This document shows positions 29,565 through 49,265 of a stretch of DNA of 64,000 bases, piece by piece. Position numbers and translations under genes: made by a program. Where the stretch lies: assembly GCA_965240325.2 (NCBI GenBank), contig OZ251247.1:62001-126000 (forward strand), read 5' to 3'. The stretch is from Rebecca billardiae RCC1528. Lineage: Eukaryota > Protista > Haptophyta. Below the pieces are notes generated by a model that saw only the letters and a list, made by a program, of their open reading frames with translations, searched no databases and had not been told where the DNA came from. How positions within the stretch are numbered: the first letter of the stretch is position 1; each line of letters opens with the position of its first letter.

Positions 29565-32500
29565 TCATGGCTGCTGCCGGCCCGCGCCCGCGCCCGCGCC
29601 GCCGCCGCCGGCGGACGCGGCGACGGGCGTGGCGGTGGGCGCGGCGGCGCCGGTGCGCGCGCGCTTGCTCAGGTGCGCCACGCCCTCCGCGCCGCCGCCC
29701 TCCGCGCCGCCGCCCGCGCCCGCGCCGGCCGGCGCGGGCGCCGTGTGTGCGGGCGGCGTGCTGCCGTGGAGCAACACGGCGGAGCGGCCGCCGGTGCCGC
29801 CGCTGTCGCCGCCGCTGCCGCCGCCGCTGTCGCCGCCCGAGCCGCCGCCCGAGTTGTCCGAGGGCGCGGGCATCGCCGGCTGCTGCGGCGGCGGCGGGCC
29901 GGCGCAGTGCCGGTGCGACGCGTGCGCCTTGGCGCACGGCGCGCAGCCGCCGCACCCGCCGCAGCCCGGCGCGGGCGCGGCGCCGCCCGCCGAGGAGCCG
30001 TGGCGCCCGCCGCCCGTCTCGCCGCGCGCGGAGACGGAGCCGTCGCCGCAGGTGGTGGAGACGCAGCCGCCTCGCTGCGCGCCGTCGCGGTGGGCGTGGG
30101 CGTGGTGGTGCGGGCGCGAGTCCGGGTGGGGCGAGTCCGGGTGCGCGGCACGCCGGCGGCCGCCGCCGCCAGCGGGGGCGCGGCGGTGGTGGCGGTGCGC
30201 GCGGGGGCGCAGCTGGCACGGCGGTCAGCGGGGGCTCGCGCGAGGCGAGGCGAGGCGCGCGCGCGCGTGCGGCGCGGGGAGGGTCGCGCGGGGCCGCGGG
30301 CGGGCGGCGCGCGGCGCGCACCCCTGCCACTGCGGCCGCGCTGAGCAGCGCGAGCGCGCCGCCGCCGCCGTCCGCGCACGCGCACGCGCTCGCCGCGGCC
30401 GCGGCGGCGCCGGCCGCGCCGCTGCCGCCGCCCGCCGAGCCGACGGCGGAGGAGGCGGCGCCGCCGCGCGCGGGGCCCCAGCCGCCGGGCGAGGAGGGCG
30501 TGGCGTGCGCGAAGAGGTGCGCCGACTCGACCGCCGAGCGCCGCCCGCCGCCCGAGCCGCCCGAGCCGCCGCCGCCCGAGCCGCCGCCGCTGCCGCCGCC
30601 GCTGCCGCCGCCGCTGCCGCCGGCAGACGGCGCGCCGCGCGCGCCCGCGGCCGCGCGCGCGAGCGCGCGCGCGGCGGCGGCGCCGCCGTCGGGGTCGATG
30701 GCGGCGCGCGCGCGGCGCTCGGCGTCGGTCGCGCCGCCGCCCGCCGCGCCCTCCGCGCCCTCCGCGCCGCCGCCGCCGCCGAGCGCGCCGCCCGGCCCGC
30801 CGCCGTCCGCCGCCGCGCGCGCCGCGCCGTCGCGGCCGCCGAAGGGCGCCACCGTCACGCGCTGCACGCCGAGGTGCGCGGCGCGGTGCGCGGGGTGGGG
30901 CTGCGCGTGCGCGCCGCCCCCGCCGGCTGCTGCTGCTGCCGCCACCGCGCGGCGGTGGTGGCGGTGCGCGCTCGCGTCGCCCTCGCGCGCCGCGCGGTGC
31001 GAGTGGCCGTGCGCCGACTGCGCGCCGCCGCCCGCGCCGCGCGCAGACGGCGGCGCGGCCGCCGCCATCGCGGGCGCGCCGCAGCGCGTGCGCTGCGCGC
31101 GCGGGCGCGGGGGGGCGGGGCGCGTGGCGGCGGCGGAGGGCGCGCGGCGGTCAGCGCGCGGCGGCGCGGTGGCGCGGCGCTGCTGCCGCCGCAGCCGCGG
31201 GGCGGGCGCGCGCAGGGCGGGGGCGCGGCCGCACCTTGGCGCCACACGCAGGGCCCGCGCCCGCCGGCTGCGGCTGCGGCGGCGGCTGCGGCTGCGGCGG
31301 CTGCTCGCCCGGCGGCGGCGGCGGCGGCATCGCGCCGTCGGCGGCGGTGGCGCCGGCCGCGGCGCGCGCGGCGGCGCCGGCTGCACCGCCGGCGGCGGCG
31401 GCGGCTGCGCGCGCGTCGGCGGCGGCGGGCGCGGCGGCGCCGAGCGGCGGCGCGCCCGCCGCGCCCGCGCCCGCGCCGCCGCGCGCCGCCGCTCCCGGCC
31501 GCGCGCGCGGCGGCGTGCCCGCGCCGTGGCCGCCGCCGTTGCCGTTGCCGCCGCTGCCTGAGCCGCCGCCCGAGCCGCCGCCGTTCCCATCCGAGCCCGT
31601 CGGCGCCGAGCCGGACTCGTACGCGGTGAGCGGCGGCGGCAGCAGCGGGCCACCGCCGCCGCCGCCGCCCTGCCCCTGCTGCCCGCCGCCGCCGCCGGCT
31701 GCGCCGCCGCCGCCCACGTCCATGGCGCCCGCGCCCGCGGCGGCGCCGTCGTCCGCGCCGCCGCCCGCGCCGCCCGCGTCCGCGCCCGCCGCCGCCGTGC
31801 CGATCGTCGAGCGCGGCCCGCACGGCCGCGCGGGCTGCGCCGAGCGCGGCGGCGGCGGATAGCCGAACGCACACGCCGCGTGCGTCGCCGCGGCCGCGGC
31901 GGCGGTGCGCCTCCGCACCGCGTCGGCGACGGCGGCGGCCTCTGCGGCGTAGCGCTGCGTGTGCGCCGCGAGCTCCTGCGGGTTGGGGCGCGGTGTGCGG
32001 TGTGCGTGCGCGTGTGTGGGTGTGGGTTAGGGTTAGGGTTAGGGCGCGGTGTGCGGTGTGCGTGTGTGGGGGCCGGCGGCGCGCCCACACGCCAGCGCGG
32101 CTGGCGTGTGCGCGCGGCGGCGCACACGCACACGCGCACGCGCACGCGCACGCGCACGCACCTGCTGCGTGAGCGGCGGCGAGAGCGGCGCGTCAGCAAG
32201 CGTCGGGCTGGGCGCGCGCGCCACCCCCTCGCCCGCGCGCCCCTCGGCGCCGTCGAGCCGCCGCCCGCCGTCAGCGCGCGCCCCGCCGCCGCCACCATGG
32301 CGGTGGTGGTGGCGGTGGGCGGCGCGGCCCGCGCCGCCGTCCGCGCCGCCGCCGCCGCCGCCGCCGCCGTGCGGCGCGGCGTGCGCGTCGGCGCCGAGAG
32401 CGGCCGCGTCCGCGCGCGCCGCGCGCGGGCGCACGCCGCCGCCCGGCGCGTGCGCAGCGTCCGGGTCGGCGTCGGCGTCCGTCTCCATCGGGTCGTCCGC

Positions 32501-34438
32501 ATGGGCGCACGCGCCATGGCCGCCCCCGCGCTCGGCGGCGGCGGCGCCGCCGCCGCCGCCCGCCGCCGCCAGCACGGCATGGCGGCGCGCCGCCGCGTCC
32601 GCCTCGGCCGCGAGCAGCCGCGCGCGCGCCGACGCGTGCGCGCGCTCGGTCGCGTCCTGCGCGCGCACACGCAGCGCGCACACGCACGCGGCGGGTGTGG
32701 CGGTGCGCGCGGCCGCAGGGGCGGGCGTGCGACTGCTGCTGAGCCGACGACGCGCGCGCGCGCTCGCGCGCGGCAGCCCCAGCCCCAGCCCCGCAGCCAC
32801 AGACACAGAGCCACGTGTCACAGGCACAGGCACACACAGGGAGAGCGACGGACGGACACACACACGCGCGAGCGAGCGAACGCCCGCGCCGCCCGCGCCC
32901 CGCGCCCGCCCGCACGCACCTGCGCCGCCGCGTCCGCAGCCACGCGCCACTCCCGCCGCTGCGCCGCGCAGACGAGCTTCATCGCCAGCAGGTCGGAGTG
33001 GCGCTGCTGCGCGGACACGTCGAGCACGTCGTCGGCGGCGTCGGGCGCGGACGGGTGCGCGGCGCAGCCGTGCGCGCCGTCGTGCGCGCCGCCGCGCTCG
33101 CACCCGCCGTGCGCGCGCGCCGCGTCCGCGCCGTGCGCGGCGAGCGCGCACGCGGCGTGCGCGCCGCCGCCCGCGCCGCCGAGCGCGCCGCCGCCGAGCG
33201 CGCCGCCCGCCGCGCCGCCGCCGCCGCCGCCGCCCGCGGCGCGCGCCTCGGCCGCGCGCGCGGCGAGCGCCTCGACCGCGGCGGCCGCGCCCGCGCGCGC
33301 CGCGTACACACGGCCCACCGCCTCGGCGCGCTGCGCCAGCCCCGCCGCCGCCGCCGCCGCCGTCAGGTGCCCCAGCTCGACCGGCGCGCCGTCGGCGCCG
33401 CCGCCGCCGCCGCCGCCCTCGGCCACCTCGTCGAGCGCGGCCGTCTCGGCGGCGCGCGCCGTGCGCGTGGCGATGGAGGCGGAGAGCCTTGCGATCTGCG
33501 CGTCGATCTGCTGCATGAACTCGGGCGCGATCGGGTGCGGCGCGTTGATGAGCCCGCCCAGCAGCCCCAGCTGCGACTCGAAGGCGGAGCTCGAGTTGCG
33601 GATGGCCGCCTCGAGCGCCAGGACCTTGTCGGTGAGCGAGTGCACGCGCAGCCGCAGCATCGAGACCGAGCACGCCGACTGCGGCGGGGCGGGGCCGGGG
33701 CCGGGCGGCAGCGGCTGCTGCGGCTGCGGCTGCGGCTGCGGCTGCGGCTGCGGCTGCGGCTGCGGCTGCGGCTGCGGCGGCGGGTCGGTCGAGCCGCCCG
33801 AGCCGCGCGCGGACGCGTCGGCGCCGCCGTCGCCAGAGCCGGCGGCGCCGCCGCCGCGCTCGGCCGAGCCCGCGCCGCCCGGCGCGGACGGCGGCGCGGC
33901 GGCCGAGCCGCCGCGCTCGGCGCTGCCGCTGCCGCCGCGCGCGCCGCCGCTGCCGCCGCGCCCGCGCCCGCTGCCGCTGCCGCTGCCGCCCTGCGGCTGC
34001 CCGCCGCTCGCCGCGCCGCTGCCGCCCGCGCCGCCCGCCGTGGCGCCGCTGCCGCCCGCGCCCGCTGCAGCGCCCGCCGCGTGGTGGTGCTGCGAGGAGG
34101 AGCGCTTGATCTCGCCCAGCTGCTCGCGGCAGCCGCGCGCAAACAGCGCGTGCGAAAACTCGACCGACGTGGGCGTGGACGCGTGCACCACTTTGTAAAA
34201 GCCGTAGAAGTGCAGCTGCCGCACGAACGAGCGGAAGTTGGAGTGCTTGAAGTACGCCGGGAGCACCTCCGCCGAGAAGGCCGCCGTGTCGCGCACCGCA
34301 AAGCCCTGCCCGCAGCTCCGCCAGCAGACCAGCGAGTCCGTCTGTGGCGAGCTCACAATCTCGTACAGCTTGAGCAGAAAGGGCGGCGTGCGCGCCAGCG
34401 CCATCTGCAGAGACGCGCTCGCGGCGGCAGAGGCGGCC

Positions 34439-34477
<39 letters not shown>

Positions 34478-35299
34478 GGCGCGGGGTCGGCGGCCGCAGC
34501 GCCGGCACCGGCGGCAGCGTCGGCCGCGGGCGGCTGCGCCGCCGCCGCCGAGGCGGGCCAGCCGCCGCCGCCGCCGCCGCCGCCGCCGCGGCTCGCCTCG
34601 GCGGCGCGCGCGCGCTGCGCCGCGGCCGCCGCCGTCTCCGCCGCCGCCATCGCCGCGGCCGCGTGCGCGAGCTGCTGCGCGTGCAGCGTGCTCGCAGCGG
34701 CGGCGGTGGAGGCCGGGGCGGCCGCAGACACGCCGCCGCCCAGCGCGCCCGCCGCCGCGTGCGCCGTGAGCTGCGCAAGGCTGAGGGGGCCGGGCGGCGG
34801 GTGCGGCTGCGGCTGCGGCTGCCCGCCGGCGGCGACGGCTGCGGCCGCCGCGGCGAGCGACGCGCACGCCTGCTGCTGCTGCTGCTGCGCCGGCTGCAGC
34901 GCGCACGGCGCCATCTGGCCGCCCGCCCCCCCGCACTGCGCCGGCAGCGCCTGCGCCGACGACAGCCCCTGCGGCGGCGCGCCCGCGCAGAGGTGGTGCG
35001 CGAGCTGCGCGGCGCACGCGCCCACGCCGCCCAGCTGCGCCGGCGGCGCGCCCGCGCCGAGCAGCGGCAGCGCGGGCGGCTGCGCGTGGTGGTGCGAGCA
35101 CGTCGCGCACCGCACCGGGTGGCCCGCCGCCGCGGCTGAGAGCGCTCCCGCCATCAGCGGCGCCGCGCAGCCCGCGCAGAGCGCGCAGCCGCCCGCGTGC
35201 GCGGACGGCCCCGGCGGCGGCGGCGGCGGCGGCAGCGCCGGCGCGGCGTGGAAGGGCTGCTGGTGCGGGTGGGGCGGCGGCGGCAGCAGCTGGTGCTGG

Positions 35300-35362
<63 letters not shown>

Positions 35363-36672
35363 GGCTGGCCCAGCGGCGCGTGGTGGTGCGCCGCCGCCGG
35401 CCCGAGCTGCGCCGCGTGCTGCTGCCCCAGCTGGTGGTGCGCGTACGCCGAGTGGCCCGCACCCGCGGCGCCTGCGTGCGAGTTGGGCGGCGCCAGGCCC
35501 ATCCGCGGCTGCTGCTGCGCCGGCGGCGGCTGCGGCTGCGAGGGCGGAGGCTGCTGGCCGTACCCAGCGGCCGCGTAGTGCTGCGCGGCGGCGAGCTGCT
35601 GCGCCTGCTGCTGCAGCAGCAGCTGCAGCTGCTGCTGCTGCTGCTGCTGCTGCTGCGCCTGCTGCTGCTGCTGCGCCTGCGCCTGCTGCTGCGCGCCATA
35701 CCCGGCCGTGTGCGCCGGGCCGGCGCCCGCCGACGCGGCGGGGTGCACGACCGCTGTGGGCGGCACCATCGGCAGCAGCAGCGGCGGCGGCGCGCACGAG
35801 AGCTGCATCGGCGCCGCGCCGGCGCACGCCGCGGCCGAGACGCCGCCGCCGCCGCCGCCGCCAGCTGGTTCGGGGTGCCACAGGGGCGGCGGCCACTCGA
35901 GCTGCATCGGGGCGGAGCCCGTGCCCGCGCCCGGCGGCGGCGCCGCCGAGCCGTAGGGCGGCGCCCGGCCGTACGGGTAGCCGCCGTGCGCGGGCGCAGC
36001 CGACGGCGGCGGCTGCTGCTGTGCGTGCTGCGGCGGCGGCGGCGGCGGCGGCGCCGCCGAGTAGAGCTGCTGCTGGTGCTGCTGCTGCTGCTGCGGCTGC
36101 TGCTGCTGCTGCTGCGGCTGCTGCTGCGACGGCGGCTGCTGCTGCTGGGGCGGCGGCGGCAGCGCGGGCTGCGGCGGCGCGGGCGGCGCGCAGGCGCGCG
36201 CCCAGCAGCCCGACGGCTCGCGCTCGATCTCCATCGCGACGGAGCCCGCGCCGGCGTACAGCGCAGCACACGCGCCGGCCGCGTGCGGCGGCGGCGGCGG
36301 CTGCGACGCCGGCCACGGCGCGCCGGGCAGGACGGCGGCGGCGGGCGCGTCGAGGCCGAGCGTGGCGAGGCGCTCGTTGAGCGCGACGCTGCCGCCCCCC
36401 TCGCGCCCTGCCGCGCTCGCGTGCCGCGCGCCCGCGCGCGCGGCGTCGGGCGCGCCGACGGGCGCGTCGGCGCCGCCGGCCGCGCCGGGATGCCACGCGC
36501 CGCCGCCGGCCGCGGAGGCGGCGGCGGCGAGGTCGGTGGCCGCGTGCGAATCAGCGCGTAATGGTGGTCCCCTCGCGCCGCCCGGCGCCTCGGCCGGCGG
36601 CGACTCTCCTCTCGCCGCCGCGCCCGAGGGCGCGGCGGCCGCGTCGTGGGGTGGTGGTGGGCCGCGCCACAT
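29565..36672 (-). CDS. Very large HSF-type DNA-binding-domain transcription factor, about 5 exons
   Basis: HSF domain PPFLLKLYEIVS...LPAYFKHSNFRSFVRQLHFYGFYK...EFSHALFARG...IKR at about 34100-34392, then heptad-like LRLRVHSLTDKVLALEAAI. GT-AG introns at about 32919-32658, 32161-31977, 31235-31093 and 30321-30213 give one frame to a stop at 29565. The 3' exons are less certain. Confidence 0.8.
35286..35362 (-). repeat. Coding (CAG)n polyglutamine tract in the HSF gene
   Basis: About 20 consecutive ctg on the + strand; more Q-rich tracts at about 35600-35690 and 36065-36150. Confidence 0.9.
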
Positions 36673-39075
36673 GCGGCAAAAAAGCAATGTTGCTTGCCCT
36701 CGCCCCCACGCCAGGGCTGCAGCGGGGCGGCCAGAGGAGTTCCCTCGTGAGTGGCGAGAAAGAACCGCGGGGTGCCGGTGCTTCGCCGCGATTGGCCGGC
36801 GATATTCGCCAGCCCGACGAATTCGTACCAACTCATCAAGGCGATGCCAAACGCGCCAATCGGATCGCCGCTCATTTGAGCGCCGCCCAATGGGCTTCGA
36901 GCACCGCCCGAGTTCCGCAGGGCGGCCAAATTTCGCGAGAGCGAAGTCGATCGGCGCTCGCTTCGTCGAGCTCGGAGCCCCCAAGGGAAAACCCTCGAAC
37001 CAGCCCGCGTGGAACCGAACCTGCCGGCCGAAGTTTCGAACACCGCCGACGCCGCCGGGTATCTGAACCCTCGCGCGCTGCGCAGGTAAGCAGGGGGGTC
37101 ATAGTGGCCGCGGCGTGACGGGTATTTTACCTGCGACTTAACCCGGCGCGCGCGCTGGGTGGCCGCGCCGGACGACGATGGGGGCGGCGCGGCCGCGCTC
37201 GCGCGCCCCGGGTGTCAAGGCGCGCGCGCGCCCGCTGCCCGGCGGCGGGCGCGGCGCGGCCGCGGGATCGCGCGCGCCGCCGCGCGGACTCTGCCGGCTG
37301 AGCGGACGGCGGCATGCGGCCAGGCGCGCTCCGCTCCCGCGGGGCGTCGGACCGAAGTCTGACGGACGCGGAGGGCGCGGCCGTCGGCGGCGGGCGTGGT
37401 CGCGGCTGCGCGCGAGCACGCGGGCACCACTCGCGCGCGGTGCCAAGGGAGGGCTGTGGATGCGTAGCCCCACCCCGCGTCCGTGCGCCAAGCGCCCACC
37501 AAGCCACGCCCCTCGCGCCCACCGCTGCCGCGCGCGCCGCGTCGTGAGTCCGCGACCGGCGTGCTAATGGCGATCGGACTGTGACACGCATTCCGTCAGA
37601 CGTGGGGGATGCGTCCGCATCGCGGCGCGGCGCGGCGCGAAGGGCGCACGCGACGGGCGAGGGCAGTGAGTACGCGGCCGCAGCCACGGCCACGCACCGC
37701 GCCGACCAGCTCGCGCCGAGTGACGCGGGGCTCTCCGCCTCGCGCGCGGTGCCACGGCCGCCATGCTTCTAGGTGAACGCTTAAGGCGCGCCGGGGAGGC
37801 GGTGGAGAAGCGGAGTAATACGCAGGTAAGCGTGAGATCGCTGATGGTCTTCTGCCCGTACTCAGGCTTTTCAAATTCCACATAGCTATCGTCATCAAGC
37901 GAAAACAACGATTGAAATTGGCTCCCTTCGGTAAGTAGTGAAAGTATCCTCATCGCTCTCCCTGCCGTGATGGTTTGGAGCGATGAAAGCCTCGGCTCGC
38001 AAACCACACTGACCAATTATATGATTTAAACACTGACCGAACAGCACCGGTTTACCCATTCTATGATTTAACGACACCGTTTTAAACCTACTGCGCATGT
38101 AATTACCAGCTACTCGTTGGGCGACGTACTCCGGAGCAGAATTCCAGCTTCATGATCAATTCAATGTTGGAACAGCGTAAATAATGCGCGCCAAATCTAC
38201 CCCGCGTGTGCCGTCAGGCGCGGAACTTGCCGGGCAGCAGCACGATCCACGTCGATGGCGTCCGCGACGGTGCACGCACAGCAGTGTCGGGCGCGGCGGG
38301 ACACGGCAGGCCGCGCTTCGGCGGCTGCGCGCGGCGCGCCGCGCAGCTTTCACGCGCGCCGCTCTGCCGCGCACCCGCGCGCCCGCCAAGTCGCGCCACC
38401 CGTGCAGGCCCGCGGCCGCCGGCCGGCGGGTGCGTCCCGGGCCCCGGCTGCGGCGCCGCCGCGGCGCGCGAGTCCCAGCCGCGGTCGGCACCGCGTCGCC
38501 GGCCTGCTCGCCCGCCGGTCGCAGCGCGCCGGTGACGCTCGGAACGCCCCAGCCGGCCGTAGGCCACGCTGACGCGGCCAGACAGCGCAGTCGGCCGCCA
38601 TCGCCGACACGCGTCGCGGGCCGCGCCCGCCATGGCTGGCGCCGTGCCGGTGCCGCGCACTCAGCGTGCGCTCGTCAGGCCGTGATGCGGCCGATCAGAC
38701 GCATATCTGTCGGGCTGCCAGTCTTGTCAGCTGGCTGCCGGTCGAGTGACGACGAAGCCCAGCACTCCCCGACCGCGACCGCCTCTCCGGAGGCGGTATC
38801 CGGACTACGACCACCGCCCGGCAGTCCGCCGCACTGAGTCCGCGGGCCGGGGGCGCGGCCCGCCGCGGGGCCCCCGCCGGACTGAGAGTCAGACTACGGG
38901 TCAGCCCCGCTACAGAAAAACGTAGTACTACCGTAGCAGCAGGTTTCATTCCCGAGCGGGCGCCATCAAAGTTGCGCGCAGCGCGGAGCTCCGCCAATAA
39001 CCCGCCCCTAAAATCTGCTGCACGCCGCCACCGGCACACGTTGGCACTGCGCTGCTAGGCTTCCTGGGCCCTGGC

Positions 39076-39937
39076 TCAGCGGCTCAGGCCGGGCGCCTGC
39101 CGCATCAGCGACGACGTCGACGCGGACGACACGGCTGGCGGCGGCGGCGCTGCTGGCGCCTCGCCGCCGCCGCCGTCGCCGCCGCCGCCGAGGTAGCGCT
39201 TGCACACGTACCGCTGCGGGTGTCCCTCGCACGGCAGCTGCACCCACTGCGCGCTCGCACCCTCGAGGGCGGCGCAGTCGGCGCGCGCGCGCGGCTGCGC
39301 GGGCGGCGCGCCCGCCGGCTGCGCGGCGCCGTCGGCCGGGTGGGCGCGCCGCCAGTTGGCGTACGCGCTGCCCTTGAGCCGGCCGTCCGCCCACGCCCAC
39401 CCGCCTCCGCCTGCCCCCGCCCCCCGCCCCTCCTGCGCCGGCTGCCGGAACAGCCCCAGCAGCAGCAGCCCCCCGCTGGGCCCCAGCAGGCAGCCGTGCA
39501 GCCGACCCTCCGCGCCGTCGCCCACAGAGCTCAGCACCGCAGAGCTCGGCAGCGCGGCGGTGGCGGCGGTGGCGGCGGCGGTGGCGTTGCGCCGCGGGTG
39601 CAGCGCGGCGCACGCGGCCGCGGCGGCGCGCGGCGCGAGCGGCGGCCCCCGCTCCGCCGTGCCATCCCCGCGCAGGCCGTACGCCGCGCGCCCGCCCGGC
39701 CCCGTGTAGACGTGCCAGCCGTGCGCGTCCAGGGGGAGGGAGCGGAGGAGGCGCGCGCACTGGCGGCACTCGCGCAGCCCCGCGGCGCTGAGCGCGAGGC
39801 AGACGCCCAGCGCCACGCACAGCCAGCACGCGTACGCGCAGCCCCAGACCAGCAGCCGCCGCGGCCGCGGCCGCAGCCGGCCGAGCAGCGCGCGCGCGCG
39901 CCGCGCGCCGCGCCGCCGCCCGCTGCCGCTGGGCGCC

Positions 39938-39981
<44 letters not shown>

Positions 39982-42394
39982 CTCCGGAGCGACGCGCGCG
40001 GCACGGCCGGCGACGGCGTGCGGCGGCATGCCCGACGGCGCCACCGCCTCGCTCGCGCGCGGGCCCCGCCGCGCGCGGCCGCCGTCCGGCCCGTCCGCCG
40101 CTGCCGCCGGCGCTGACGCTGCCACCACCGCCGCCGCCGCCGCCGCCGGGCGCGTCACTGCAGACACAGCCGCCTCTGCGGTGCAGCCGCCGAGCGCATC
40201 CGCGCCGGCGGCGGCGGCGGTGGTGGTGGCATCGTCGGCGCGATGGATGCCGCAGCCCGCGCCCACCGCGCCCGCCGCGCCCGCCGCGCCGGCGGCAGCG
40301 GCGGCTGCGCTCGGCGCGGCGCCCGCGGCGCTGTCGGCGGCGGCGCCGTCGGCGTCGCCGCCGCCCGCGCGCGGCGCGCCCTCCGCCAGCGATCGCAGCG
40401 TGCGCCTCAGCGCGGCGTTGAACGCGCCCCGCTCGGCGTGGCCGCTCGTCACCTCGACGCACGCCAGCAGCCACTGCCGGTCCGCCTCCGAGTAGCACCG
40501 CGCGCCTTCCACGTCGAACCCCTCCACACTCGCCAGCTCAAAGTCCGGGAGCAGCACGGCCTCTGTGGGGCGGCCGCCTCCGCCCACGTACGCGTGGGCG
40601 ACGAGCTCGACGACGCACCAGAGGCGCTGCGCGAGGGTGGGGCCGAGCAGCAGCAGCAGACGCTCGCAGCCCGCGAGGTACACGGGCAGCCGCGCCACGT
40701 CGCAGCCCGCCTCGTCGTCGCACCCCGCCACGTCGCAGCCCGCCTCGTCGTCGGCCGCGCGCTCGGCCGCCGGCTGCGCGCCGGCTGCCGCGCGCCCCTG
40801 CCGCCCCTGCCGCCCCTGCCGCGCCTGCGCGCGCGGGCCGGGCAGCAGGCAGCACCTGCACAGCACCGCCACAGCCACAGCCGGGGGGGCGAGGGGCGAG
40901 GGGGGGGGTGAGCGGGGCCAGCCTCCCGCGCGGGTGCGGGCGGTGCAGCGTGTGTGCGGCAGCAGCAGCGCAGCAGCAGCGCAGCAGCCCCCGTCGATCC
41001 AGAGCACAGGGCTAGGGGTAGGGGTAGGGGTACGGGTAGGGGTAGGGGTAGGGCGTGCAGCGGCAGCGCAGCACCTGTCGATCCAGAGCAGAGGCTCCCG
41101 CCCGTGCTGCGCCACGAACCGAGCGCGCCACGCGCTCAGCGCGGCCCACTTGTGCGACGGCTCGTCCAGGCTCGAGTGCGTCACAAAGGCTGCGCGCACG
41201 CACGCACGCACACACGCACACACGCACGCACGCATACACGCACGCACACACGCACACGCACGCACGCACGCCAGCGGGGCGGGAGGGCAGCAGGGCAGCA
41301 GGGCGGGTGTGTCGGGGGTGTCGGCTGGGCGGCGGGCGGCGGGGCCAGCCGTGCCCGAGCGCGCGCGCACCGTCGATCTCGCCCAGCTCGGCGTGCCGCG
41401 TGCACGCGTACAGCGCCGCCTCCGCCGCGCGCCCCGCCGCGTGCGGCAGCGCCCCTAGGGGCTCGAAGGCGGAGGGCGGCAGGCGGTCGAAGCGGACCGC
41501 GCGCAGGCTGCGCTGCGCGGCGCGCACGAGGGCGTCGACGTCGCGCGCGCCGAGGAGGGTGCCCACGCCGGCGGCGGAGGCGACGTCGGCGCCGCGCGAG
41601 ACGAGGCAGCCGAGCACGCGCGCGCGCACGCGCGGCAGCAGGCAGCCGAGCGCGAGCGCGAGCGCACCGGCCGCGCGCACAAACCACACGCTGGCGAGCT
41701 GTGCGGCGGAGGGGAAGGCGGGCGCCTGCAGGCGGAGGAGGAGCAGGTTGTGCAGCGTGTTGAGCACGACCACGAGGTACACGCAGCCCACGCCGTCCCA
41801 CAGCAGCTCGAGCACGCCGCGCATCGACACGCGCCGCTCCGCCGGCGCGCGGCGCGGCGCAACGCCGAGCGCCGCCGCCAGCGCGCGCAGCCACACGGCG
41901 GAGAGGGCGGTGAGGGCGCAGAGCGGGGCGAGCTGCAGCGCGAGGAAGACGGCGGCGAGGGCGCCGGGGCACGTGTCCAGCCGCGCCCCGCCCAGCCGCG
42001 CCGCCCACGGCCGCGCCAGCAGGTTCGCCACCGCGAGCGCCGGCCCCGCCAGCGCGAGCGCGAGGGTGACGGCACTCACCGTGGCCGTGTCGGCGGGGCG
42101 CAGCGCGAGGAGGAGGGCGGGGAGGGCGAGCATGCCGCACGTGGTGGCGGCGGAGAGGTCGGAGCCGAACGCCTCGCTCCGCCGCCCGAAGAGCGCGCCC
42201 AGCGTGTACGCCAGCCCCGCGCACAGCAGCGCTCCGCCCACGAGCAGCGGAGGCGCCGTCGTGCGCAGCCGCTCGCGCCGCCCCGCCGCCTGGGCGTCGA
42301 GCAGGCGCTGGCGCAGGAGCGCGAGCTGGACGGCGCGCGGGAGCTCGTACGCCTTGTCCGCCTCGCCGTCCGCCGGTCGCGGCGTGGAGGACAT
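39076..42394 (-). CDS. Multi-pass membrane protein: about 6 TM, TIR-like domain, TM, C-type lectin domain; exons 42394-41371, 41189-41075, 40855-39076
   Basis: Splicing gives D|AFVTHS...LLWIDR|CCL...LPVYLAGCERLLLLLGPTLAQRLWCVVEL, then a helix LLVWGCAYACWLCVALGVCLAL, then lectin motifs AAAAC, LLLLGL, WAWADG, YANW, DCAAL, WVQLPC, YVCK. Confidence 0.8.
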
Positions 42395-43857: not shown

Positions 43858-45264
43858 ATGTCTCAGTTCGCGTCGGAGGTGAAGCTCTTCGGCAAGTGGT
43901 CGTTCGAGGACGTGGAGATCCGCGACATCTCGCTGGAGGACTACATCGCCGTCAAGCCCAAGTACGCGCAGTACCTCCCGCACTCCGCCGGCCGCTGGCA
44001 GAAGAAGCGCTTCCGCAAGGCGTACTGCCCCGTCGTCGAGCGCCTCACCTGCGTACGCGCACGGCGCGCGAGCGGGGCGCGCGGGGCGCGCGGGGCGGAG
44101 CGTGGGCGAGGGGTGGCACGAGGCGAGTCGGTCGGTCTGGCGAGCACGCCGCTCCGTCGGCGCCGCGCGCGTGGGAGGCGCGACGCTCGACGGCGCGCGG
44201 CCGCACGGCGCGCTCGGGGGGCGGCGCGGCGCGCGGGCGCTCACGCCTGCGCCCGTGCTCGCGCGCGCGCCGCGCGACGCGTCGCAGGCGTTGATGCGGT
44301 ACGGGCGGAACAACGGCAAGAAGCTGATGGCCATCCGCATCGTCAAGCACTCGTTTGAGATCATCCACCTGCTGACTGACCAGAACCCGGTGCAGGTGCG
44401 GAGCACTGCGGAGCAGCGCACGTGTGTGTGTGTGTGTGTGCGCGCCGTGCTGTGGCTGCAGGGTGGGGGCGTGGAACACGTGTGTGTGCCACGCGCGTGT
44501 GCGGGGCAGAGGCACGCACGGGCAGGATCGGCACGCACGCACGCTCGCACGCGGACAGACGCACGCGGGCGGGCACTCGGCGCACGCGCGCGGCCGGCGG
44601 GCGGCCTGGCGGTGGGGGCGTGCCGTGCGCGGGCCGTGCGCACCGCCACACGGCCACACGGACAGGGCCGCAACCGGCGCGCCGAGGGCGGTGCACGCGC
44701 CGAGGCGTCGGGGCGGCGCGTGCGGCATCCGCGCCCCGCGGTGCACGCGCGGCCGGACCGCTGGGCGCTCTGCAGCGGCAGCGGCGGGGGCGGGTGCGCA
44801 CGGGAGCGGCGCGGCGGAGGGCTGGGCGGCGGAGGGCGCTGGGGCGGCGTGCGCGGCGCACGGCCGCGGGCGGGGCGTGCGGTCGTGCCGCGCATGCACG
44901 TGCCCTTTGCGGCGGCAGCGCGCGCGCCGAGCCTGACGCCCGCCCCCGCCCCCGCCGTGCCCTCCCGCGCCCCTCCCAGGTCCTCGTCGATGCCGTCATC
45001 AACTGCGGCCCGCGCGAGGACAGCACGCGCGTGGGCGGCGGCGGCGCCGTGCGGCGGCAGGCGTGCGACGTGTCGCCGCTGCGCCGCGTCAACCAGGCGA
45101 TCTTCCTCATCGCGACGGGCGCGCGCGAGGCGGCGTTCCGCAACATTAAGACGATCGCGGAGTGCCTGGCCGACGAGGTCGTGAACGCGGCCAAGGGCTC
45201 GTCCAACTCGTACGCCATCAAGAAGAAGGACGAGATCGAGCGTGTTGCCAAGAGCAACCGCTGA
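43858..45264 (+). CDS. RPS5: 40S ribosomal protein S5 (uS7); exons 43858-44052, 44288-44395, 44980-45264
   Basis: [14 protein letters not shown]...[15 protein letters not shown]...GRNNGKKL...GPREDSTR...[26 protein letters not shown]. Confidence 0.98.
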
Positions 45265-45998: not shown

Positions 45999-47468
45999 TC
46001 AGCAGACAAGCGCACGCCACGCCGTCTCGACGCGCGCGGGCGTGTCAATCCGCTGGGTGGGCTCGTCTCGCTCGGCCTCGCTCATGCCGAGGCCGAGCGC
46101 AGCCGACCGCTTGCCGCACGCGTGCACGCTGCCGTCCGCACTCACAAACAGCGAGTGGGAGTCGCCCATGGCACAGCGCACCACACGGAGAAGAGCGAGG
46201 GCAGCCACGCGCGACGGGACGGCATGCCTCATCTCTTCGGACCCCAGCCCGAGCTGGCCGTACCAGTTGACCCCAAACGTGTGCACGCTGCCGTCCGCGC
46301 CCAGCACCGCGCTGCTGTCAAAGCCAGCGCACGCGCGCACGGCGCGCACAGCGGCGAGCGCCTCAATGCGCCTCGGCGTGGGCTGCTCAGGCGTGTCTGC
46401 GTGCCCGAGCGAGCCATCCTCATCATACCCGAACGAGTACACCGCCCCCTCGCTGTCCACCACCAGGCTGTGGACTTGGCCCGCGCTCACGTGCACGGCG
46501 CGCACGCCCGCGAGCGCCTCGATGCGCTGCGGCGTGAGCTGACGCCGATGGTCGCCGTGGCCGAGCTGGCCAAGCTGACCATGGCCGCACGAGTAGACGG
46601 CGCCGTGCGCAGATAGAAGCAGCGTGTGCGCCTCACCAGCTGCCATCCCGCCCACGCGCACACCGTCCAGCGCCTCGATGCGCGTCGGCTCCCACCGGTC
46701 CTTCGTGTCGCCGTGGCCGAGCTGGCCGCAGCCGTTGCGGCCCCAGCTGTACGCGCACCCAGCGGCGGTGAGCGTGAGGCTGTGACGCCTTCCAGCGGCG
46801 ATCGCCAGAACCACGACACCGACCAGCGCCGCGACGGGCTCGAACTCGCGACAGTCCTCCGTGTCCCCCAGCCCCAGCTGGCCCCAGCCGTTCTCGCCGC
46901 AGCCGTACACAGCGCCGGCGTCGCTCAGCGCGAGCAGGTGGTCATGGCCTGCGGCCACAGCGACCACGCGCACCGCGCTGAGGGAGGCGACGCGCGTCGG
47001 CACACGTAGTCCCCGCGCGCCCGCGTGGCCGCTAGCGACGGACGCTCGATACTCCCCCGTCGGTTGCCTGGTGTGCTCGTCCCACTCCTCCTCCTCGCCG
47101 CACGTGTGCAGCCCGCCCTCCGCGTCCACAAACGCGCTGAAGCCCTCGCCGACCGCCGCCGAAGATGCGTGCTCGCGTGCGAGCTCGATCACGCGCTCGC
47201 GCACGAAAAGCTCCTCCGTCCACGTACACGAAGCCGCGGGCTGCGTCTCGGGCAACGCGCGCTCGTGCCCGCGCGCGCGCGCGCGCTCGCGCAGCGCGCG
47301 CTCGACCGGCGAGCAGCCGCCGGGCGGCGCGGCGTGGAAGAGGCGCGCGGTGGCGTTCAGGCTGGCGAGGTCGCGCGGCGGCAGGAGCGAGATGATGCGG
47401 TCGAGCACCTCGGACGGCAGGTCGACGAGCGCGAGACGACGCGCGTGCGAGTGTGCTGCGTTGGCCAT
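45999..47468 (-). CDS. F-box-like + RCC1 repeat protein, copy 4, intronless
   Basis: LVDLPSEVLDRIISLLPPRDLASL followed by RCC1 blades. Confidence 0.92.
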   Translation of the reverse strand: MANAAHSHARRLALVDLPSEVLDRIISLLPPRDLASLNATARLFHAAPPGGCSPVERALRERARARGHERALPETQPAASCTWTEELFVRERVIELAREHASSAAVGEGFSAFVDAEGGLHTCGEEEEWDEHTRQPTGEYRASVASGHAGARGLRVPTRVASLSAVRVVAVAAGHDHLLALSDAGAVYGCGENGWGQLGLGDTEDCREFEPVAALVGVVVLAIAAGRRHSLTLTAAGCAYSWGRNGCGQLGHGDTKDRWEPTRIEALDGVRVGGMAAGEAHTLLLSAHGAVYSCGHGQLGQLGHGDHRRQLTPQRIEALAGVRAVHVSAGQVHSLVVDSEGAVYSFGYDEDGSLGHADTPEQPTPRRIEALAAVRAVRACAGFDSSAVLGADGSVHTFGVNWYGQLGLGSEEMRHAVPSRVAALALLRVVRCAMGDSHSLFVSADGSVHACGKRSAALGLGMSEAERDEPTQRIDTPARVETAWRALVC

Positions 47469-47804
47469 CGCTCTCCGCCAGCCAGTACGGTGAGAGCGCG
47501 TGAGCGTCGGCGCCGGCGCGCCGCGGCCGCGCTCCGCAGTCTCCCGAGTCGCACAGCCTGACAGCCACCGCCGTTGTACAACGGTGATGACAGTTGGCGT
47601 CTGCCTGTTCTGCAAGTTCTGCTAGCTTAGTCTTATTGCTACTGTTAATTCGCCGCGATCTGATGCTCGCGACTAGTAATAAGTAGTACAGCTGCGCATC
47701 AGCCTCTGCCCGCCGCTGGCCGACCGCGCACTCACGGCTCCGTCATCGCAACACTCGTCACTGATGCAACGCGGAGCAGTTGGACGCCGGCAGAGGGTGC
47801 TGCG

Positions 47805-49265
47805 TCAGCATACGCGAGCACGCCACGCCGCCTCGACGCGCGCGGGCGTGTCAATCCGCTGGGTGGGCTCGTCTCGCTCGGCCGCGCTCATGCCGAGGCC
47901 GAGCGCAGCCGATCGCTCACCGCACGCGTACACGCTGCCGTCCGCACTCACAAACAGCGAGTGGGAGTCGCCCATGGCACAGCGCACCACGCGTGCGGGG
48001 GCGAGGGCGCTGACTTGCGTCGGAGCCAGATGCTCGCGCTGCCGGCACCCCAGCCCGAGCTGGCCAAACTTGTTGTTCCCGAACGTGTGCACGCTGCCGT
48101 CCGCGCCCAGCACCGCGCTGCTGTCAAAGCCAGCACACGCGCGCACTGCGCGCACACCAGCGAGCGCCTCGACGCGGCATGGCGTGGACCACCTGCCACG
48201 GTCGTCGTGGCCGAGCTGGCCGTCTAAGCCACGTCCAAACGAGTGCAAGCCGCCCTCCGCGTCCACCACCAGGCTGTGCAGCGTGCCCGCACTCACGTGC
48301 ACGGCGCGCACGCCGTCCAGCGCCTCGATGCGCCTCGGCGTGTGCTGATCCTGCTCGTCGCCGTGGCCGAGACGGCCGTCCGAGCCAGTGCCGCACGAGT
48401 AGACGGCGCCTTGCACAGATAGAAACAGCGAGTGCATCAAGCCCCCGGATGCGCCGCCCGTGCGCACGCCGTCCAGCGCCTCGATGCGCGTCGGCTCCCA
48501 CCGGTCCTCCGTGTCGCCGTGGCCGAGCTGGCCGCTGACATTGTAGCCCCAGCTGTACGCACCGCCCGCGGCGGTGAGCGCCAGGCTGTGGTAGTTGCCG
48601 GCCGAGATGCCGACGGCGGGCTCACTCACGGGTAGCTCGACAAAAACGAATGCGCGCCGCTCCTCCGTGTTGCCCAGCCCCAGCTGGCCGGAGCCGTTGT
48701 AGCCGCAGCCGTACACGGCGCCGGCATCGCTCAGCGCGAGCAGGTGGCAGTTGCCAGCGGCCACCGCGACCACGCGCACCGCACTGAGGGAGACGACGTG
48801 CGTCGGCACACGCACTACATGCACGTCCGTGTGGCCGATGGCCTCGTGCACTCGGAACTCGCCCGTCGGCTCCCTGGTGTCCTCGTCCTCCTCCTCCTCC
48901 TCGCCGCACGTGTGCAGCCCGCCCTCCGCGTCCACAAACGCGCTGAAGCAGTCGCGTGCGGCGACGACTGCGGCGTGCACGCATGCGAGCTCGAGAAGGT
49001 ACTCGCGCACGAACAGCTCCTCCGTCCACGTGCGCACGCCCGAAGGCAGCGACGCCGGCAGCGCGCGCTCGTGCCCGCGCGCGCGCGCGCACTTGCGCAG
49101 CGCGCGCTCGACCGGTGAGCAACCGCCGGGCGGCGCGGCGTGGAAGAGGCGCGCGGTGGCGTTCAGGCTGGCGAGGTCACGAGGCGGCAGGAGCGAGATG
49201 ATGCAGTCAAGCACCTCTGACGGCAGGTCGACGAGCGCGCGCGTCGGTTGTGCGGTGTCGCCCAT
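47805..49265 (-). CDS. F-box-like + RCC1 repeat protein, copy 5, intronless, tandem to copy 4
   Basis: LVDLPSEVLDCIISLLPPRDLASL followed by RCC1 blades; upstream 49361-49500 is similar to 47563-47685 upstream of copy 4. Confidence 0.92.
   Translation of the reverse strand: MGDTAQPTRALVDLPSEVLDCIISLLPPRDLASLNATARLFHAAPPGGCSPVERALRKCARARGHERALPASLPSGVRTWTEELFVREYLLELACVHAAVVAARDCFSAFVDAEGGLHTCGEEEEEDEDTREPTGEFRVHEAIGHTDVHVVRVPTHVVSLSAVRVVAVAAGNCHLLALSDAGAVYGCGYNGSGQLGLGNTEERRAFVFVELPVSEPAVGISAGNYHSLALTAAGGAYSWGYNVSGQLGHGDTEDRWEPTRIEALDGVRTGGASGGLMHSLFLSVQGAVYSCGTGSDGRLGHGDEQDQHTPRRIEALDGVRAVHVSAGTLHSLVVDAEGGLHSFGRGLDGQLGHDDRGRWSTPCRVEALAGVRAVRACAGFDSSAVLGADGSVHTFGNNKFGQLGLGCRQREHLAPTQVSALAPARVVRCAMGDSHSLFVSADGSVYACGERSAALGLGMSAAERDEPTQRIDTPARVEAAWRARVC

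What the first reader, a model, noticed from the sequence alone, without database searches (positions are those of the whole stretch)
39076..42394. Receptor-like membrane protein joining a TIR-like domain to a C-type lectin domain
Seen: after removing two GT-AG introns, one frame encodes six hydrophobic helices, then DAFVTHS...WIDRCC...LPVYLAGCERLLLLLGPTLAQRLWCVVEL, a seventh helix, and a C-type lectin motif set (WAWADG, YANW, DC, W..LPC, YVCK). Established: TIR domains start with a DxFxSHS strand and carry WCxxEL, whose Glu is catalytic in NADase TIRs such as SARM1, plant TNLs and Thoeris ThsB; that Glu codon is intact at 40606-40608. Inference: with the N-terminus cytosolic, six helices leave the TIR-like domain inside and the seventh puts the lectin outside. 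That would be a glycan-sensing receptor with the reverse domain order of Toll-like receptors. I know of no description of this fusion, and the ORF track hides it because it spans frames.
Basis: partly seen in the sequence, partly recalled or inferred. Interest (0 to 1): 0.9.

Follow-up and report, generated by a model that had tools for sequence, protein, structure and literature searches.

The report
Algal membrane protein joining TIR and lectin-fold domains
A gene of a very GC-rich haptophyte-like alga encodes a membrane protein with six helices, an intracellular TIR-type domain, a seventh helix and an outside C-type-lectin-fold domain; the layout is real and recurs in relatives, but the lectin-fold domain lacks the usual sugar-binding residues and the function is untested.

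Summary
A three-exon gene on the minus strand (42394..39076, 972 aa) encodes six conserved hydrophobic helices, a TIR-superfamily domain, a seventh helix and a C-type lectin-like domain (CTLD).

- **TIR domain:** the AlphaFold core has pLDDT above 90. Nearly all of the best 34 structural matches are TIR domains (Z up to 9.1). The Glu of WCxxE (E463, codon 40608-40606) aligns with the catalytic Glu of plant TIRs and is invariant in 101 aligned family members.
- **CTLD:** it is below threshold in Pfam, but its model matches only CTLDs (top 50 Foldseek hits). All four canonical cysteines are present.
- **Relatives:** one protein (P0003) carries the whole layout in a single uninterrupted ORF. A Pavlovales transcript carries TIR-TM-CTLD.
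- **Wider family:** the gene belongs to an unannotated family of membrane TIR-like proteins, with 1418 representative clusters, mostly from marine protists.

The EPN/QPD and WND calcium/sugar-binding residues are absent, so glycan sensing is not predicted. No RNA evidence for this gene could be obtained. NADase activity is inferred only.

First readers of this scan noted the same layout at seven other places in this genome; those notes are unchecked. I found no paper describing the fusion.

The parts
41371..42394 (-). Exon 1 (ATG at 42394-42392; aa 1-341 plus one base). It holds the N-terminal cytosolic tail, six hydrophobic helices and the juxtamembrane region leading into the TIR-like domain.
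   Evidence: Homologous to the N-terminal region of P0003 (blastp aa 26-535, 33.5% identity, E 3e-51). GC3 is 0.97.
41633..42247 (-). Six hydrophobic segments: aa 50-70, 80-98, 103-128, 141-169, 197-222 and 233-254.
   Evidence: Hydropathy of the protein itself. The same six peaks appear in family-averaged hydropathy over 57 homologues. Arg/Lys are concentrated in the N-tail, loops 2 and 4, and after helix 6 (23.4 per sequence, against 4.6 in loops 1, 3 and 5), which fits N-in/C-in. No Pfam or Atlas match.
41190..41370 (-). Intron 1 (GT..AG, 181 nt), rich in CACGCA-type simple repeats. It splits the codon of Ala342 in EID|AFVTHS.
   Evidence: No codon periodicity (GC by position 0.75/0.80/0.77). 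An orthologue contig (L004) has an interruption at the same position.
41075..41189 (-). Exon 2 (115 nt): strand A, helix A and strand B of the TIR-like domain (AFVTHSSLDEPSHKW...REPLLWIDR).
   Evidence: Matches family members at query residues 1-42. pLDDT 95-98 in the model.
40856..41074 (-). Intron 2 (GT..AG, 219 nt, in frame, no stop). It is flanked by the 10-nt direct repeat CAGGTGCTGC. It holds a degenerate second copy of CTCTGGATCGAC and a (GGGGTA)n run on the plus strand.
   Evidence: Its removal restores WIDRCCLL, as in the orthologue's WIDKCCLL, which is contiguous in L004. Nothing in the family aligns to its translation. Modelled as disordered.
39076..40855 (-). Exon 3, including the stop at 39078-39076. 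It carries the rest of the TIR-like domain, an Ala/Gly-rich linker, helix 7, the CTLD and a tail, all in one open frame.
   Evidence: GC3 is 0.92-0.96.
40381..41383 (-). TIR-superfamily domain (aa ~338-538, interrupted by both introns). The family-invariant residues P374, W377, D379, P437, R457, W459, C460 and E463 are all present.
   Evidence: AlphaFold model with a 101-sequence alignment; core pLDDT above 90. VIA-align: RPPT-TIR Z 9.1, RUN1 9.0, ThsB 8.0, SARM1 7.8; nearly all of the top 34 entries are TIR domains. Family profile against PDB sequences: 8 of 9 hits are TIR proteins. Invariant columns.
40606..40608 (-). GAG codon of Glu463 in RLWCVVEL.
   Evidence: The profile alignment places it on the Glu of SNC1's WCLNEL. 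It is invariant in the 101-sequence alignment.
40693..40848 (-). Low-complexity expansion of about 50 aa in the loop after strand B (QGR x3 and a duplicated DDEAGCDVA). The family normally has about 15 residues here, with CIDQ.
   Evidence: pLDDT below 50. The orthologue P0001 has only about 20 residues here.
39859..40380 (-). Ala/Gly-rich linker (aa 539-712), probably disordered. It ends in an Arg-rich stretch just before helix 7.
39766..39858 (-). Seventh hydrophobic helix (aa 713-743), followed by the juxtamembrane CxxC (C743, C746).
   Evidence: Hydropathy 2.18. 10 Arg/Lys in the 22 residues before it and 3 in the 22 after. The CxxC is shared with P0089 and P0007 (alignment) and with P0003 (sequence).
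39199..39726 (-). C-type lectin-like domain (aa ~757-932) with three low-complexity insertions. The four canonical Cys are present. The EPN/QPD and WND positions are not conserved.
   Evidence: Pfam Lectin_C E 0.034, 15.3 bits against a cut-off of 22.6. Atlas: 94 of 100 nearest clusters are Lectin_C. PDB sequence search: mannose receptor E 0.004. hhalign against relatives' CTLDs: probability 85%, E 6.7e-6. Model pLDDT 71.7. All top 50 Foldseek hits are CTLDs, probability 1.00, target TM-score 0.57-0.75 for single-domain chains.

Best explanation
**What is shown.** This is an intact three-exon gene for a polytopic membrane protein of a Pavlovales-like haptophyte. The layout is:
- a cytosolic N-terminus
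- six conserved transmembrane helices
- a cytosolic TIR-superfamily domain that keeps every family-invariant residue, including the Glu at the catalytic position of NAD-cleaving TIRs
- a disordered linker
- a seventh helix
- an extracytosolic C-type lectin-like domain held by two disulfides

The gene belongs to a small branch, marked by the extra helix and CTLD, of a very large and unannotated protist family of six-helix TIR-like proteins.

**What is inferred.** The protein probably works as a surface sensor-effector. A ligand binds the CTLD. The ligand is probably not a Ca2+-dependent sugar ligand, because those residues are missing. Binding clusters the protein, the cytosolic TIR domains self-associate, and the TIR cleaves NAD+ to make a signal or deplete NAD. 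The outcome would be a defence, self/non-self or cell-death response. The conserved six-helix module may drive oligomerisation or act as the downstream membrane effector.
For: **Gene model**
- Splice sites, reading frame and GC3 support the exon-intron structure.
- Splicing intron 2 restores colinearity with the orthologue.

**Family**
- 1418 representatives at E<=1e-3.
- Among 110 relatives, 21 hit TIR_2, 4 hit HET and 4 hit Lectin_C.

**TIR fold**
- Searches show the fold.
- The Glu aligns with the plant TIR catalytic Glu and is invariant.

**CTLD fold**
-.

**Topology**
- Six conserved helices with a positive-inside pattern.
- An Arg-rich cytosolic flank before helix 7.
- Disulfide-bonded CTLDs are extracytosolic (established knowledge).

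**Same layout in relatives**
- P0003 carries it in one uninterrupted 2169-nt ORF on three contigs.
- The P0089 cluster holds an MMETSP transcript and a Pavlovales sp. CCMP2436 protein.
- All CTLD-bearing members cluster in one group of the TIR-domain tree. The tree needs 2 changes, the shuffled mean is 6.9, and 0 of 500 shuffles are as low (quick tree).

**Enzymatic TIRs in algae**
- A 2026 preprint reports a group of TIRs from distant eukaryotes, haptophytes among them, with a highly conserved active-site Glu. It also reports cADPR-isomer production by a green-algal TIR.
Against: - No RNA or read evidence exists for this gene.
- The window's own domains fail Pfam thresholds: no TIR hit, and Lectin_C at 15 bits against 22.6.
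- The protein departs from the family at near-invariant positions: W to S in SHSW, the Q of CIDQ is lost, and Y to L in GPTY.
- It carries a ~50-aa low-complexity insertion in the loop after strand B. The equivalent loop in known TIRs (the BB loop) matters for assembly and catalysis, so activity could be impaired.
- The CTLD lacks Ca2+/sugar ligands.
- The closest orthologue contig (L004) ends its ORF 19 residues after helix 7, with no CTLD in the 70 nt that remain. P0017 and P0103 in the same branch also lack a CTLD. The ectodomain is therefore dispensable or often lost.
- NADase activity, ligand, localisation and the immune role are all untested.
Confidence: 0.6

Rival explanations
1. The architecture is the same, but the TIR-like domain is a non-enzymatic assembly or scaffold module, as in animal TLR/MyD88 signalling. 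Alternatively it is a HET-like death-inducing module acting by another mechanism. The conserved Glu would then serve structure or binding.
For: Four of 110 relatives also touch Pfam HET. An Atlas neighbour cluster is named as a heterokaryon-incompatibility domain. The enzymatic activity of HET domains is stated as not yet established (PMC10197012). The protein has a large insertion in the loop after strand B and has lost three near-invariant residues.
Against: The Glu, and the Trp four residues before it, are invariant over 101 diverse members. That is the pattern expected for a catalytic site. The best structural matches are the enzymatic plant, SARM1, ThsB and SPARTA TIRs.
Confidence: 0.2
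2. The protein is not a defence receptor. It would instead be an adhesion, mating or self-recognition protein, or a sensor of an abiotic or matrix ligand. The CTLD would be a generic protein-binding fold and the six-helix module would be the functional core, for example a channel or transporter regulated by the TIR-like domain.
For: The CTLD lacks the sugar-binding residues. The six-helix module is the part shared by most family members, while the CTLD occurs in only 4 of 150 top representatives. The neighbouring genes (an HSF-type DNA-binding gene and F-box-RCC1 genes) give no defence context.
Against: Nothing is known about the six-helix module. In every lineage studied, TIR-superfamily domains with the conserved Glu act in immunity or cell death (established knowledge). 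First readers reported several paralogues in this genome (unchecked), and such multiplicity is typical of recognition families.
Confidence: 0.15
3. The gene model is an artefact of a 72-79% GC sequence in which long ORFs occur in every frame, or the locus is a decaying pseudogene with low-complexity expansions.
For: ORFs of 300-500 aa occur in other frames over the same DNA. There are long Ala/Gly runs, three disordered insertions in the CTLD and a recent 219-nt insertion inside the TIR domain. No transcript evidence exists. The two word-index searches found no match for the window's TIR or CTLD part.
Against: Three homologous modules (N-terminal helices, TIR, TM7-CxxC-CTLD) lie colinear in the order seen in P0003. 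There are no stops or frameshifts. GC3 is 0.95-0.97 in exons against about 0.8 in introns. All invariant family residues and all four CTLD cysteines are kept.
Confidence: 0.05

Closest known systems
Enzymatic TIR domains (plant TNL/TIR-only such as RUN1, RPP1, SNC1; SARM1; bacterial ThsB and TIR-APAZ)
   Same: The fold is the same: Z 7.8-9.1 over 107-132 aligned residues for these matches. The W-x3-E motif on helix C has the Glu aligned to the catalytic Glu. The strand-A motif is of the D-x-F-x-S type.
   Different: The window's protein gives no Pfam TIR/TIR_2 hit. The family has its own signature (DAFxSHSW, WxDKxCIDQ, LPVFLxGC, GPTYxxRLWCxxE). The domain is anchored between membrane helices. 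The protein carries a ~50-aa insertion after strand B. Enzymatic activity is untested.
Fungal HET domain (Pfam PF06985)
   Same: HET is a remote TIR relative. From memory, its motif blocks (WIDxxCIxQ; W-x3-E) are similar. Four of 110 relatives give weak HET hits. The literature treats HET as a TIR-related cell-death domain (PMC10197012).
   Different: HET hits are weaker and rarer than TIR_2 hits (best E 0.0065 against 2.4e-5). HET proteins are soluble or NLR-linked fungal proteins. They are not polytopic membrane proteins with an ectodomain.
Toll-like receptors / IL-1 receptors
   Same: Both have an extracellular recognition domain, a single helix next to it, and a cytosolic TIR-fold domain. 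Signalling is presumed to occur by induced TIR association.
   Different: There is no LRR or Ig ectodomain. The order is reversed: TIR is N-terminal to the helix and the ectodomain is C-terminal. Six additional N-terminal helices are present. The TIR resembles the enzymatic class rather than the adaptor class. The layout evolved independently.
Animal C-type lectin receptors (mannose receptor, langerin, CD23, mincle, ASGPR)
   Same: The CTLD fold is shared (top 50 Foldseek hits). Also shared are the four canonical cysteines and the WIGL-like, WxWxDG and YxNW motifs, together with a membrane-anchored ectodomain.
   Different: There is no EPN/QPD plus WND Ca2+/sugar site. The cytosolic output is a TIR-type domain rather than ITAM/hemITAM or endocytic motifs. 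Low-complexity insertions are present.
Plant TIR-lectin chimeras (TIR fused to the PP2/Nictaba lectin domain, e.g. AtPP2-A family)
   Same: A TIR domain and a lectin-type domain occur in one polypeptide. The term 'TIR-lectin' is used in the plant literature.
   Different: Those are soluble cytosolic proteins with a Nictaba-type lectin, not a CTLD. They have no membrane helices, and both domains lie in the same compartment.

Membership tests
TIR superfamily | Flavodoxin-like alpha/beta fold with the TIR strand and helix order | tested here: met
   AlphaFold model with core pLDDT above 90. Nearly all of the 34 best VIA-align entries are TIR domains, Z 7.1-9.1. The Foldseek top ranks are also plant TIRs, but with weak E-values (0.09-1) because of the disordered insert.
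TIR superfamily | Match to Pfam TIR (PF01582) or TIR_2 (PF13676) at the curated threshold | tested here: not met
   The window's protein gives no hit at E<=10. Among 110 relatives, 21 hit TIR_2 at E<=0.01, best 2.4e-5. The family profile against PDB sequences finds TIR proteins only weakly (E 0.03-1). This is a divergent branch, not canonical TIR_2.
TIR superfamily (NADase class) | Conserved catalytic Glu on helix C | tested here: met
   E463 (40608-40606) aligns with the Glu of WCLNEL in SNC1. It is invariant in 101 sequences.
TIR superfamily (NADase class) | NAD+ cleavage activity | not testable with these tools
   Needs a biochemical assay.
C-type lectin-like domain (CTLD) | CTLD double-loop fold | tested here: met
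   Model pLDDT 71.7, pTM 0.70. All top 50 Foldseek PDB hits are CTLDs, probability 1.00, E from 2.8e-4.
C-type lectin-like domain (CTLD) | Four canonical cysteines forming two disulfides | tested here: met
   C795 (helix 1), C907 (DC), C922 (LPC) and C931 (YVCK) sit in the columns of the relatives' cysteines.
C-type lectin-like domain (CTLD) | Pfam Lectin_C (PF00059) at the curated threshold | tested here: not met
   13-15.3 bits against a cut-off of 22.6, covering only profile positions 53-107. hhalign to relatives' CTLDs gives probability 85%, E 6.7e-6. P0003's CTLD passes at 7.9e-15.
Ca2+-dependent carbohydrate-binding C-type lectins | EPN or QPD triplet plus the WND motif that ligate Ca2+ and sugar | tested here: not met
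   The long-loop region reads HPA / QPA / QPR, and strand 4 reads WVQ. This was judged from sequence alignment only.
Toll-like receptors | LRR ectodomain, one helix, C-terminal TIR | tested here: not met
   No LRR hit. The order is six helices, TIR, helix, CTLD.
Fungal HET domain | Match to Pfam HET (PF06985) | tested here: not met
   The window's protein gives no hit. Only 4 of 110 relatives hit, best E 0.0065.

The most novel reading that the evidence does not exclude
Marine protists, above all haptophytes, hold a very large and so far unnamed class of membrane-embedded enzymatic TIR proteins (six helices plus TIR). In the Pavlovales branch this module has acquired an extra helix and an outward-facing CTLD. 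The result would be a cell-surface receptor whose direct output is TIR NADase activity. It would be a Toll-like logic that evolved independently, with reversed domain order and an enzymatic rather than adaptor TIR.
Probability: 0.35. Interest if true: 0.8.

Novelty: new variant of a known kind. Interest (0 to 1): 0.6.

Why it matters
TIR domains are the shared currency of immunity in bacteria, plants and animals, yet almost nothing is known about them in the algae that dominate ocean productivity and are controlled by viruses.

This locus and its relatives offer a concrete and testable candidate. The extracellular recognition fold is wired through the membrane to a TIR domain of the enzymatic type. 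The locus also points to a family of more than a thousand sequence clusters, with a conserved six-helix module, that current domain libraries do not name.

If the TIR is an active NADase, the protein would be a direct surface-to-NAD signalling receptor. It would also be an independent invention of the Toll-like layout.

Tried and rejected
**Searches that gave nothing useful**
- Word-index protein searches with the window's TIR part and CTLD part found nothing. The candidate lists were probably swamped by low-complexity words. The exhaustive HMMER search then found the family.
- Pfam on the window's pieces gave no TIR hit and only a sub-threshold Lectin_C hit.
- The Atlas search of the six-helix region gave no credible relative (best 0.71).

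**Read evidence**
- The first run search listed none.
- The second listed only runs holding 5-8% of the sampled words, from unrelated metagenomes. I read these as probable simple-repeat or conserved-part matches; this was not tested.
- After that call I sent no reference spanning those places to any search tool. Local scripts still handled the whole coding sequence for composition and for a local domain extraction and tree.

**Gene-model alternatives**
- I considered a longer intron 2 reaching to the LPVYL region, because family members align only to residues 1-42 and ~160-268 of the unspliced query. I rejected it. No in-phase acceptor fits. The extra ~35 residues are repeats (QGR x3, DDEAGCDVA x2).
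- I looked for an introner family behind intron 2. No other copy occurs in the window.

**Tree and literature**
- The careful maximum-likelihood tree did not finish, so only the quick tree is reported.
- Literature searches for the fusion under several names found only plant TIR-PP2 lectins.
Full report
**1. What is in the sequence**

The window is 71.5% G+C. The gene lies on the minus strand. Reading the three minus-strand frames and joining them at GT..AG sites gives this model:

| Feature | Coordinates |
|---|---|
| Exon 1 | 42394..41371 |
| Intron 1 | 41370..41190 |
| Exon 2 | 41189..41075 |
| Intron 2 | 41074..40856 |
| Exon 3 | 40855..39079 |
| Stop codon | 39078-39076 |

The product is 972 aa.

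Hydropathy shows six segments between aa 50 and 254 and one at aa 713-743. In DNA this rich in G+C, long ORFs occur in all frames, so an open frame alone proves nothing. Two further lines of evidence support the model:
- Third-position G+C is 0.95-0.97 in the three structured parts. It is flat (0.75-0.82) in both introns.
- Homology supports each part (sections 2 to 5).

**2. The central domain belongs to a very large family and is a TIR-superfamily fold**

An exhaustive HMMER search with the by-reference ORF 41190..40381 (exon 2, intron 2 and the start of exon 3) found 1418 representative proteins at E<=1e-3 and 535 at E<=1e-10. They align to query residues 1-42 (exon 2) and ~160-268 (exon 3 from ARLPVYL). 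Nothing aligns to the translated intron.

The family consensus is DAFxSHSWHDD..KW..L..W...F....GREP..WxDKxCIDQ..I...L.CLPVFLxGC..LLVLxGPTYLxRLWCxxELF.

The window's protein keeps all eight invariant residues: P374, W377, D379, P437, R457, W459, C460 and E463. It departs at a few near-invariant ones:
- W to S in SHSW
- loss of the Q of CIDQ
- Y to L in GPTY

The window's protein gives no Pfam TIR hit. Of 110 relatives, 21 hit TIR_2 (best 2.4e-5) and 4 hit HET.

A profile of 101 family domains searched against PDB sequences returns nine weak hits, eight of them TIR proteins. The SNC1 alignment places the family's RlWCvvEl on SNC1's STWCLNEL, so E463 sits on the plant catalytic Glu.

An AlphaFold model built with that alignment has pLDDT above 90 over the core (residues 1-40 and 165-270 of the query). 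The intron-encoded and low-complexity parts are disordered. Foldseek ranks plant TIRs first, but weakly, because of the 120-residue disordered insert. VIA-align, which trims such stretches, gives the following:

| Match | Z |
|---|---|
| RPPT-TIR | 9.1 |
| RPP1, RUN1 | 9.0 |
| ThsB | 8.0 |
| SARM1 | 7.8 |
| MyD88 | 7.8 |

Nearly all of the first 34 entries are TIR domains. The aligner's own notes say that Z around 8 alone can be a common arrangement. Here the uniformity of the hits, the profile hits and the motif alignment agree. I conclude that this is a divergent TIR-superfamily domain lying between TIR_2 and fungal HET. The literature already treats HET as a remote TIR relative (PMC10197012).

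**3. The splice sites**

The best hit, P0001, is 67% identical and reads ...REPLLWIDKCCLLAPEAGDERASDDVLRLPVYVAGC.... The splice therefore restores colinearity.

The contig that encodes P0001 (L004, 69% G+C) has an interruption at exactly the position of intron 1 (EID|AFVTHS). It has no interruption at the position of intron 2.

Intron 2 has three notable features:
- It is flanked by the 10-nt direct repeat CAGGTGCTGC.
- It contains a degenerate second copy of the exon sequence CTCTGGATCGAC.
- It contains a (GGGGTA)n run.

It looks like a recent, lineage-specific insertion that is removed as an intron. One caveat applies: I do not know whether L004 is genomic DNA or unspliced RNA.

Compared with the orthologue, this protein also has about 35 extra low-complexity residues after WIDRCCLL, in the loop after strand B.

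**4. The C-terminal domain is a CTLD**

Sequence evidence:
- Pfam Lectin_C is sub-threshold (E 0.034, 15.3 bits against 22.6).
- Of the 100 nearest Atlas clusters, 94 are Lectin_C.
- The best PDB sequence matches are mannose-receptor and asialoglycoprotein-receptor CTLDs (E 0.004-1.5).
- hhalign against the CTLDs of relatives gives probability 85%, E 6.7e-6.

The alignment shows the CTLD landmarks:
- AAYGL in the column of the relatives' conserved YR[LF] motif (the invariant Tyr)
- the helix-1 Cys
- LLLGL in the WIGL position
- WAWADG, YANW, DC, W..LPC and YVCK
- a juxtamembrane CxxC, shared in the alignment with P0089 and P0007 and seen in P0003's sequence

The AlphaFold model (six-sequence alignment) reaches pLDDT 71.7 and pTM 0.70. 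All 50 best Foldseek PDB matches are CTLDs at probability 1.00, with target TM-scores of 0.57-0.75 for the single-domain chains.

The Ca2+/sugar-binding signature is absent. The long loop has HPA, QPA and QPR where EPN or QPD would be, and strand 4 reads WVQ instead of WND. The fold is shown. Lectin activity is not predicted.

**5. One protein, and the topology**

The second half of the TIR domain, helix 7 and the CTLD lie in one uninterrupted exon-3 frame.

Relatives have the same layout:
- P0003 (722 aa) has the complete layout: six helices, TIR, helix and a Lectin_C domain at 7.9e-15.
- P0003 is encoded by a single uninterrupted 2169-nt ORF on three independent contigs.
- The window's protein aligns with P0003 over aa 26-535 at E 3e-51. 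Exon 1 is therefore part of the same protein.
- P0007 and P0040 also carry the helix and CTLD.
- The P0089 cluster holds an MMETSP transcript, a protein of Pavlovales sp. CCMP2436 and a longer member with part of the helix region.

In a quick ML tree of 148 TIR domains, all CTLD-bearing members and the orthologue fall in one group of nine (SH-aLRT 85). The tree needs 2 changes, against a shuffled mean of 6.9, with 0 of 500 shuffles as low. One origin of the extension is therefore plausible.

Family-averaged hydropathy over 57 relatives shows the same six peaks. Arg/Lys counts per sequence are as follows:

| Region | Arg/Lys per sequence |
|---|---|
| N-tail | 7.9 |
| Loop 1 | 1.3 |
| Loop 2 | 0.8 |
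| Loop 3 | 2.2 |
| Loop 4 | 3.3 |
| Loop 5 | 1.1 |
| After helix 6 | 11.4 |

This is the positive-inside pattern of an N-in, C-in six-helix bundle. Helix 7 has 10 Arg/Lys in the 22 residues before it and 3 in the 22 after. So the TIR domain is cytosolic and the CTLD is outside or luminal, as its disulfides require.

**6. What remains uncertain**

- No reads could be laid on the gene, so transcription and splicing here are inferred.
- The orthologue contig stops 19 residues after helix 7 and ends 70 nt later. Two members of the same branch, P0017 and P0103, have the helix but no CTLD. The ectodomain is therefore variable.
- The six-helix module matches nothing known.
The G+C content matches the 73.25% reported for Diacronema lutheri (PMC8379373), and the named relatives are Pavlovales. 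This fits a Pavlovales origin but does not show it.

**7. Mechanism and comparison**

The best-supported reading is a surface sensor-effector in three steps:
1. A ligand binds the CTLD.
2. Binding clusters the protein.
3. The cytosolic TIR domains assemble and cleave NAD+.

Only the architecture is shown. The rest is inferred from how enzymatic TIRs work in plants, bacteria and SARM1. A 2026 preprint also reports a group of TIRs from distant eukaryotes, haptophytes among them, in which the active-site Glu is highly conserved, and it shows 3'cADPR production by a green-algal TIR.

The protein works like a Toll-like receptor in logic but fails its membership test. It has no LRR, the domain order is reversed, and six extra helices are present. 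Plant 'TIR-lectin' proteins (TIR plus PP2/Nictaba) are soluble and unrelated in their lectin part.

I found no paper describing a TIR-CTLD membrane protein. The search covers open-access text only.

First readers of this scan flagged the same layout at seven other places in this genome. I could not check those notes. If they are right, the gene belongs to a paralogous family, as recognition receptors often do.

**8. Verdict**

This is a new variant of known kinds (TIR-domain receptors, CTLD receptors). It is a doorway to a large unnamed protist family. Interest 0.6.

Noticed in passing
window 40856-41074 (minus strand): Intron 2 is flanked by the 10-nt direct repeat CAGGTGCTGC. It carries a degenerate second copy of the upstream exon sequence CTCTGGATCGAC and a (GGGGTA)n run. 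It is absent from the orthologue contig L004, which does keep the intron 1 position. This looks like a recent intron gain by insertion or tandem duplication. No other copy occurs in the window.
   Followed up: partly
window 41190-41370; similar stretches near 3110-3180, 17725-17835, 18460-18625, 19535-19895, 20290-20385, 29437-29467, 32120-32160, 44531-44573: Intron 1 is built of CACGCA-type simple repeats. Similar repeats recur at many places in the window (blastn). They may mark other introns or intergenic DNA of this genome.
   Followed up: no
proteins P0004, P0006, P0017, P0171 and 57 others; window 41633-42247: The N-terminal six-helix module is conserved across most members of the TIR-like family, with a shared (L)PxD motif after helix 2 and an AAxxAxLxG...FR motif before the TIR. 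It has no Pfam family and no Atlas neighbour. It is an unnamed membrane domain.
   Followed up: partly
protein P0002 (1110 aa, ENA contig): One relative carries two complete tandem copies of the six-helix plus TIR-like module in a single polypeptide.
   Followed up: no
protein P0152 (701 aa, JGI): This protein has a protein kinase domain, one helix and two CTLDs. It is a receptor-kinase-like protein using the same ectodomain fold, found through P0003's CTLD.
   Followed up: no
window 32821-36984 (minus strand): A long ORF holds an HSF-type DNA-binding domain (Pfam E 5.9e-26). It is the next recognisable gene downstream of the finding.
   Followed up: no
window 46002-47615 and 47808-49265 (minus strand): Two tandem genes each have an F-box-like domain plus RCC1 repeats (Pfam E about 1e-77). 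These are the genes of the other first-reader note on this window.
   Followed up: partly
window about 12573-12812: A 12-nt piece of intron 2 matches at every 6 nt across this stretch, and the printed list was cut off there (blastn-short). This indicates a hexanucleotide tandem array of at least about 240 nt.
   Followed up: no
locus L004 1700-1839: The orthologue's ORF ends 19 residues after helix 7 (..RDCHGAQLPDG, then a stop), with only the first Cys of the CxxC. AT-richer sequence follows and the contig ends. Either the CTLD was lost in that species or an intron lies there.
   Followed up: no
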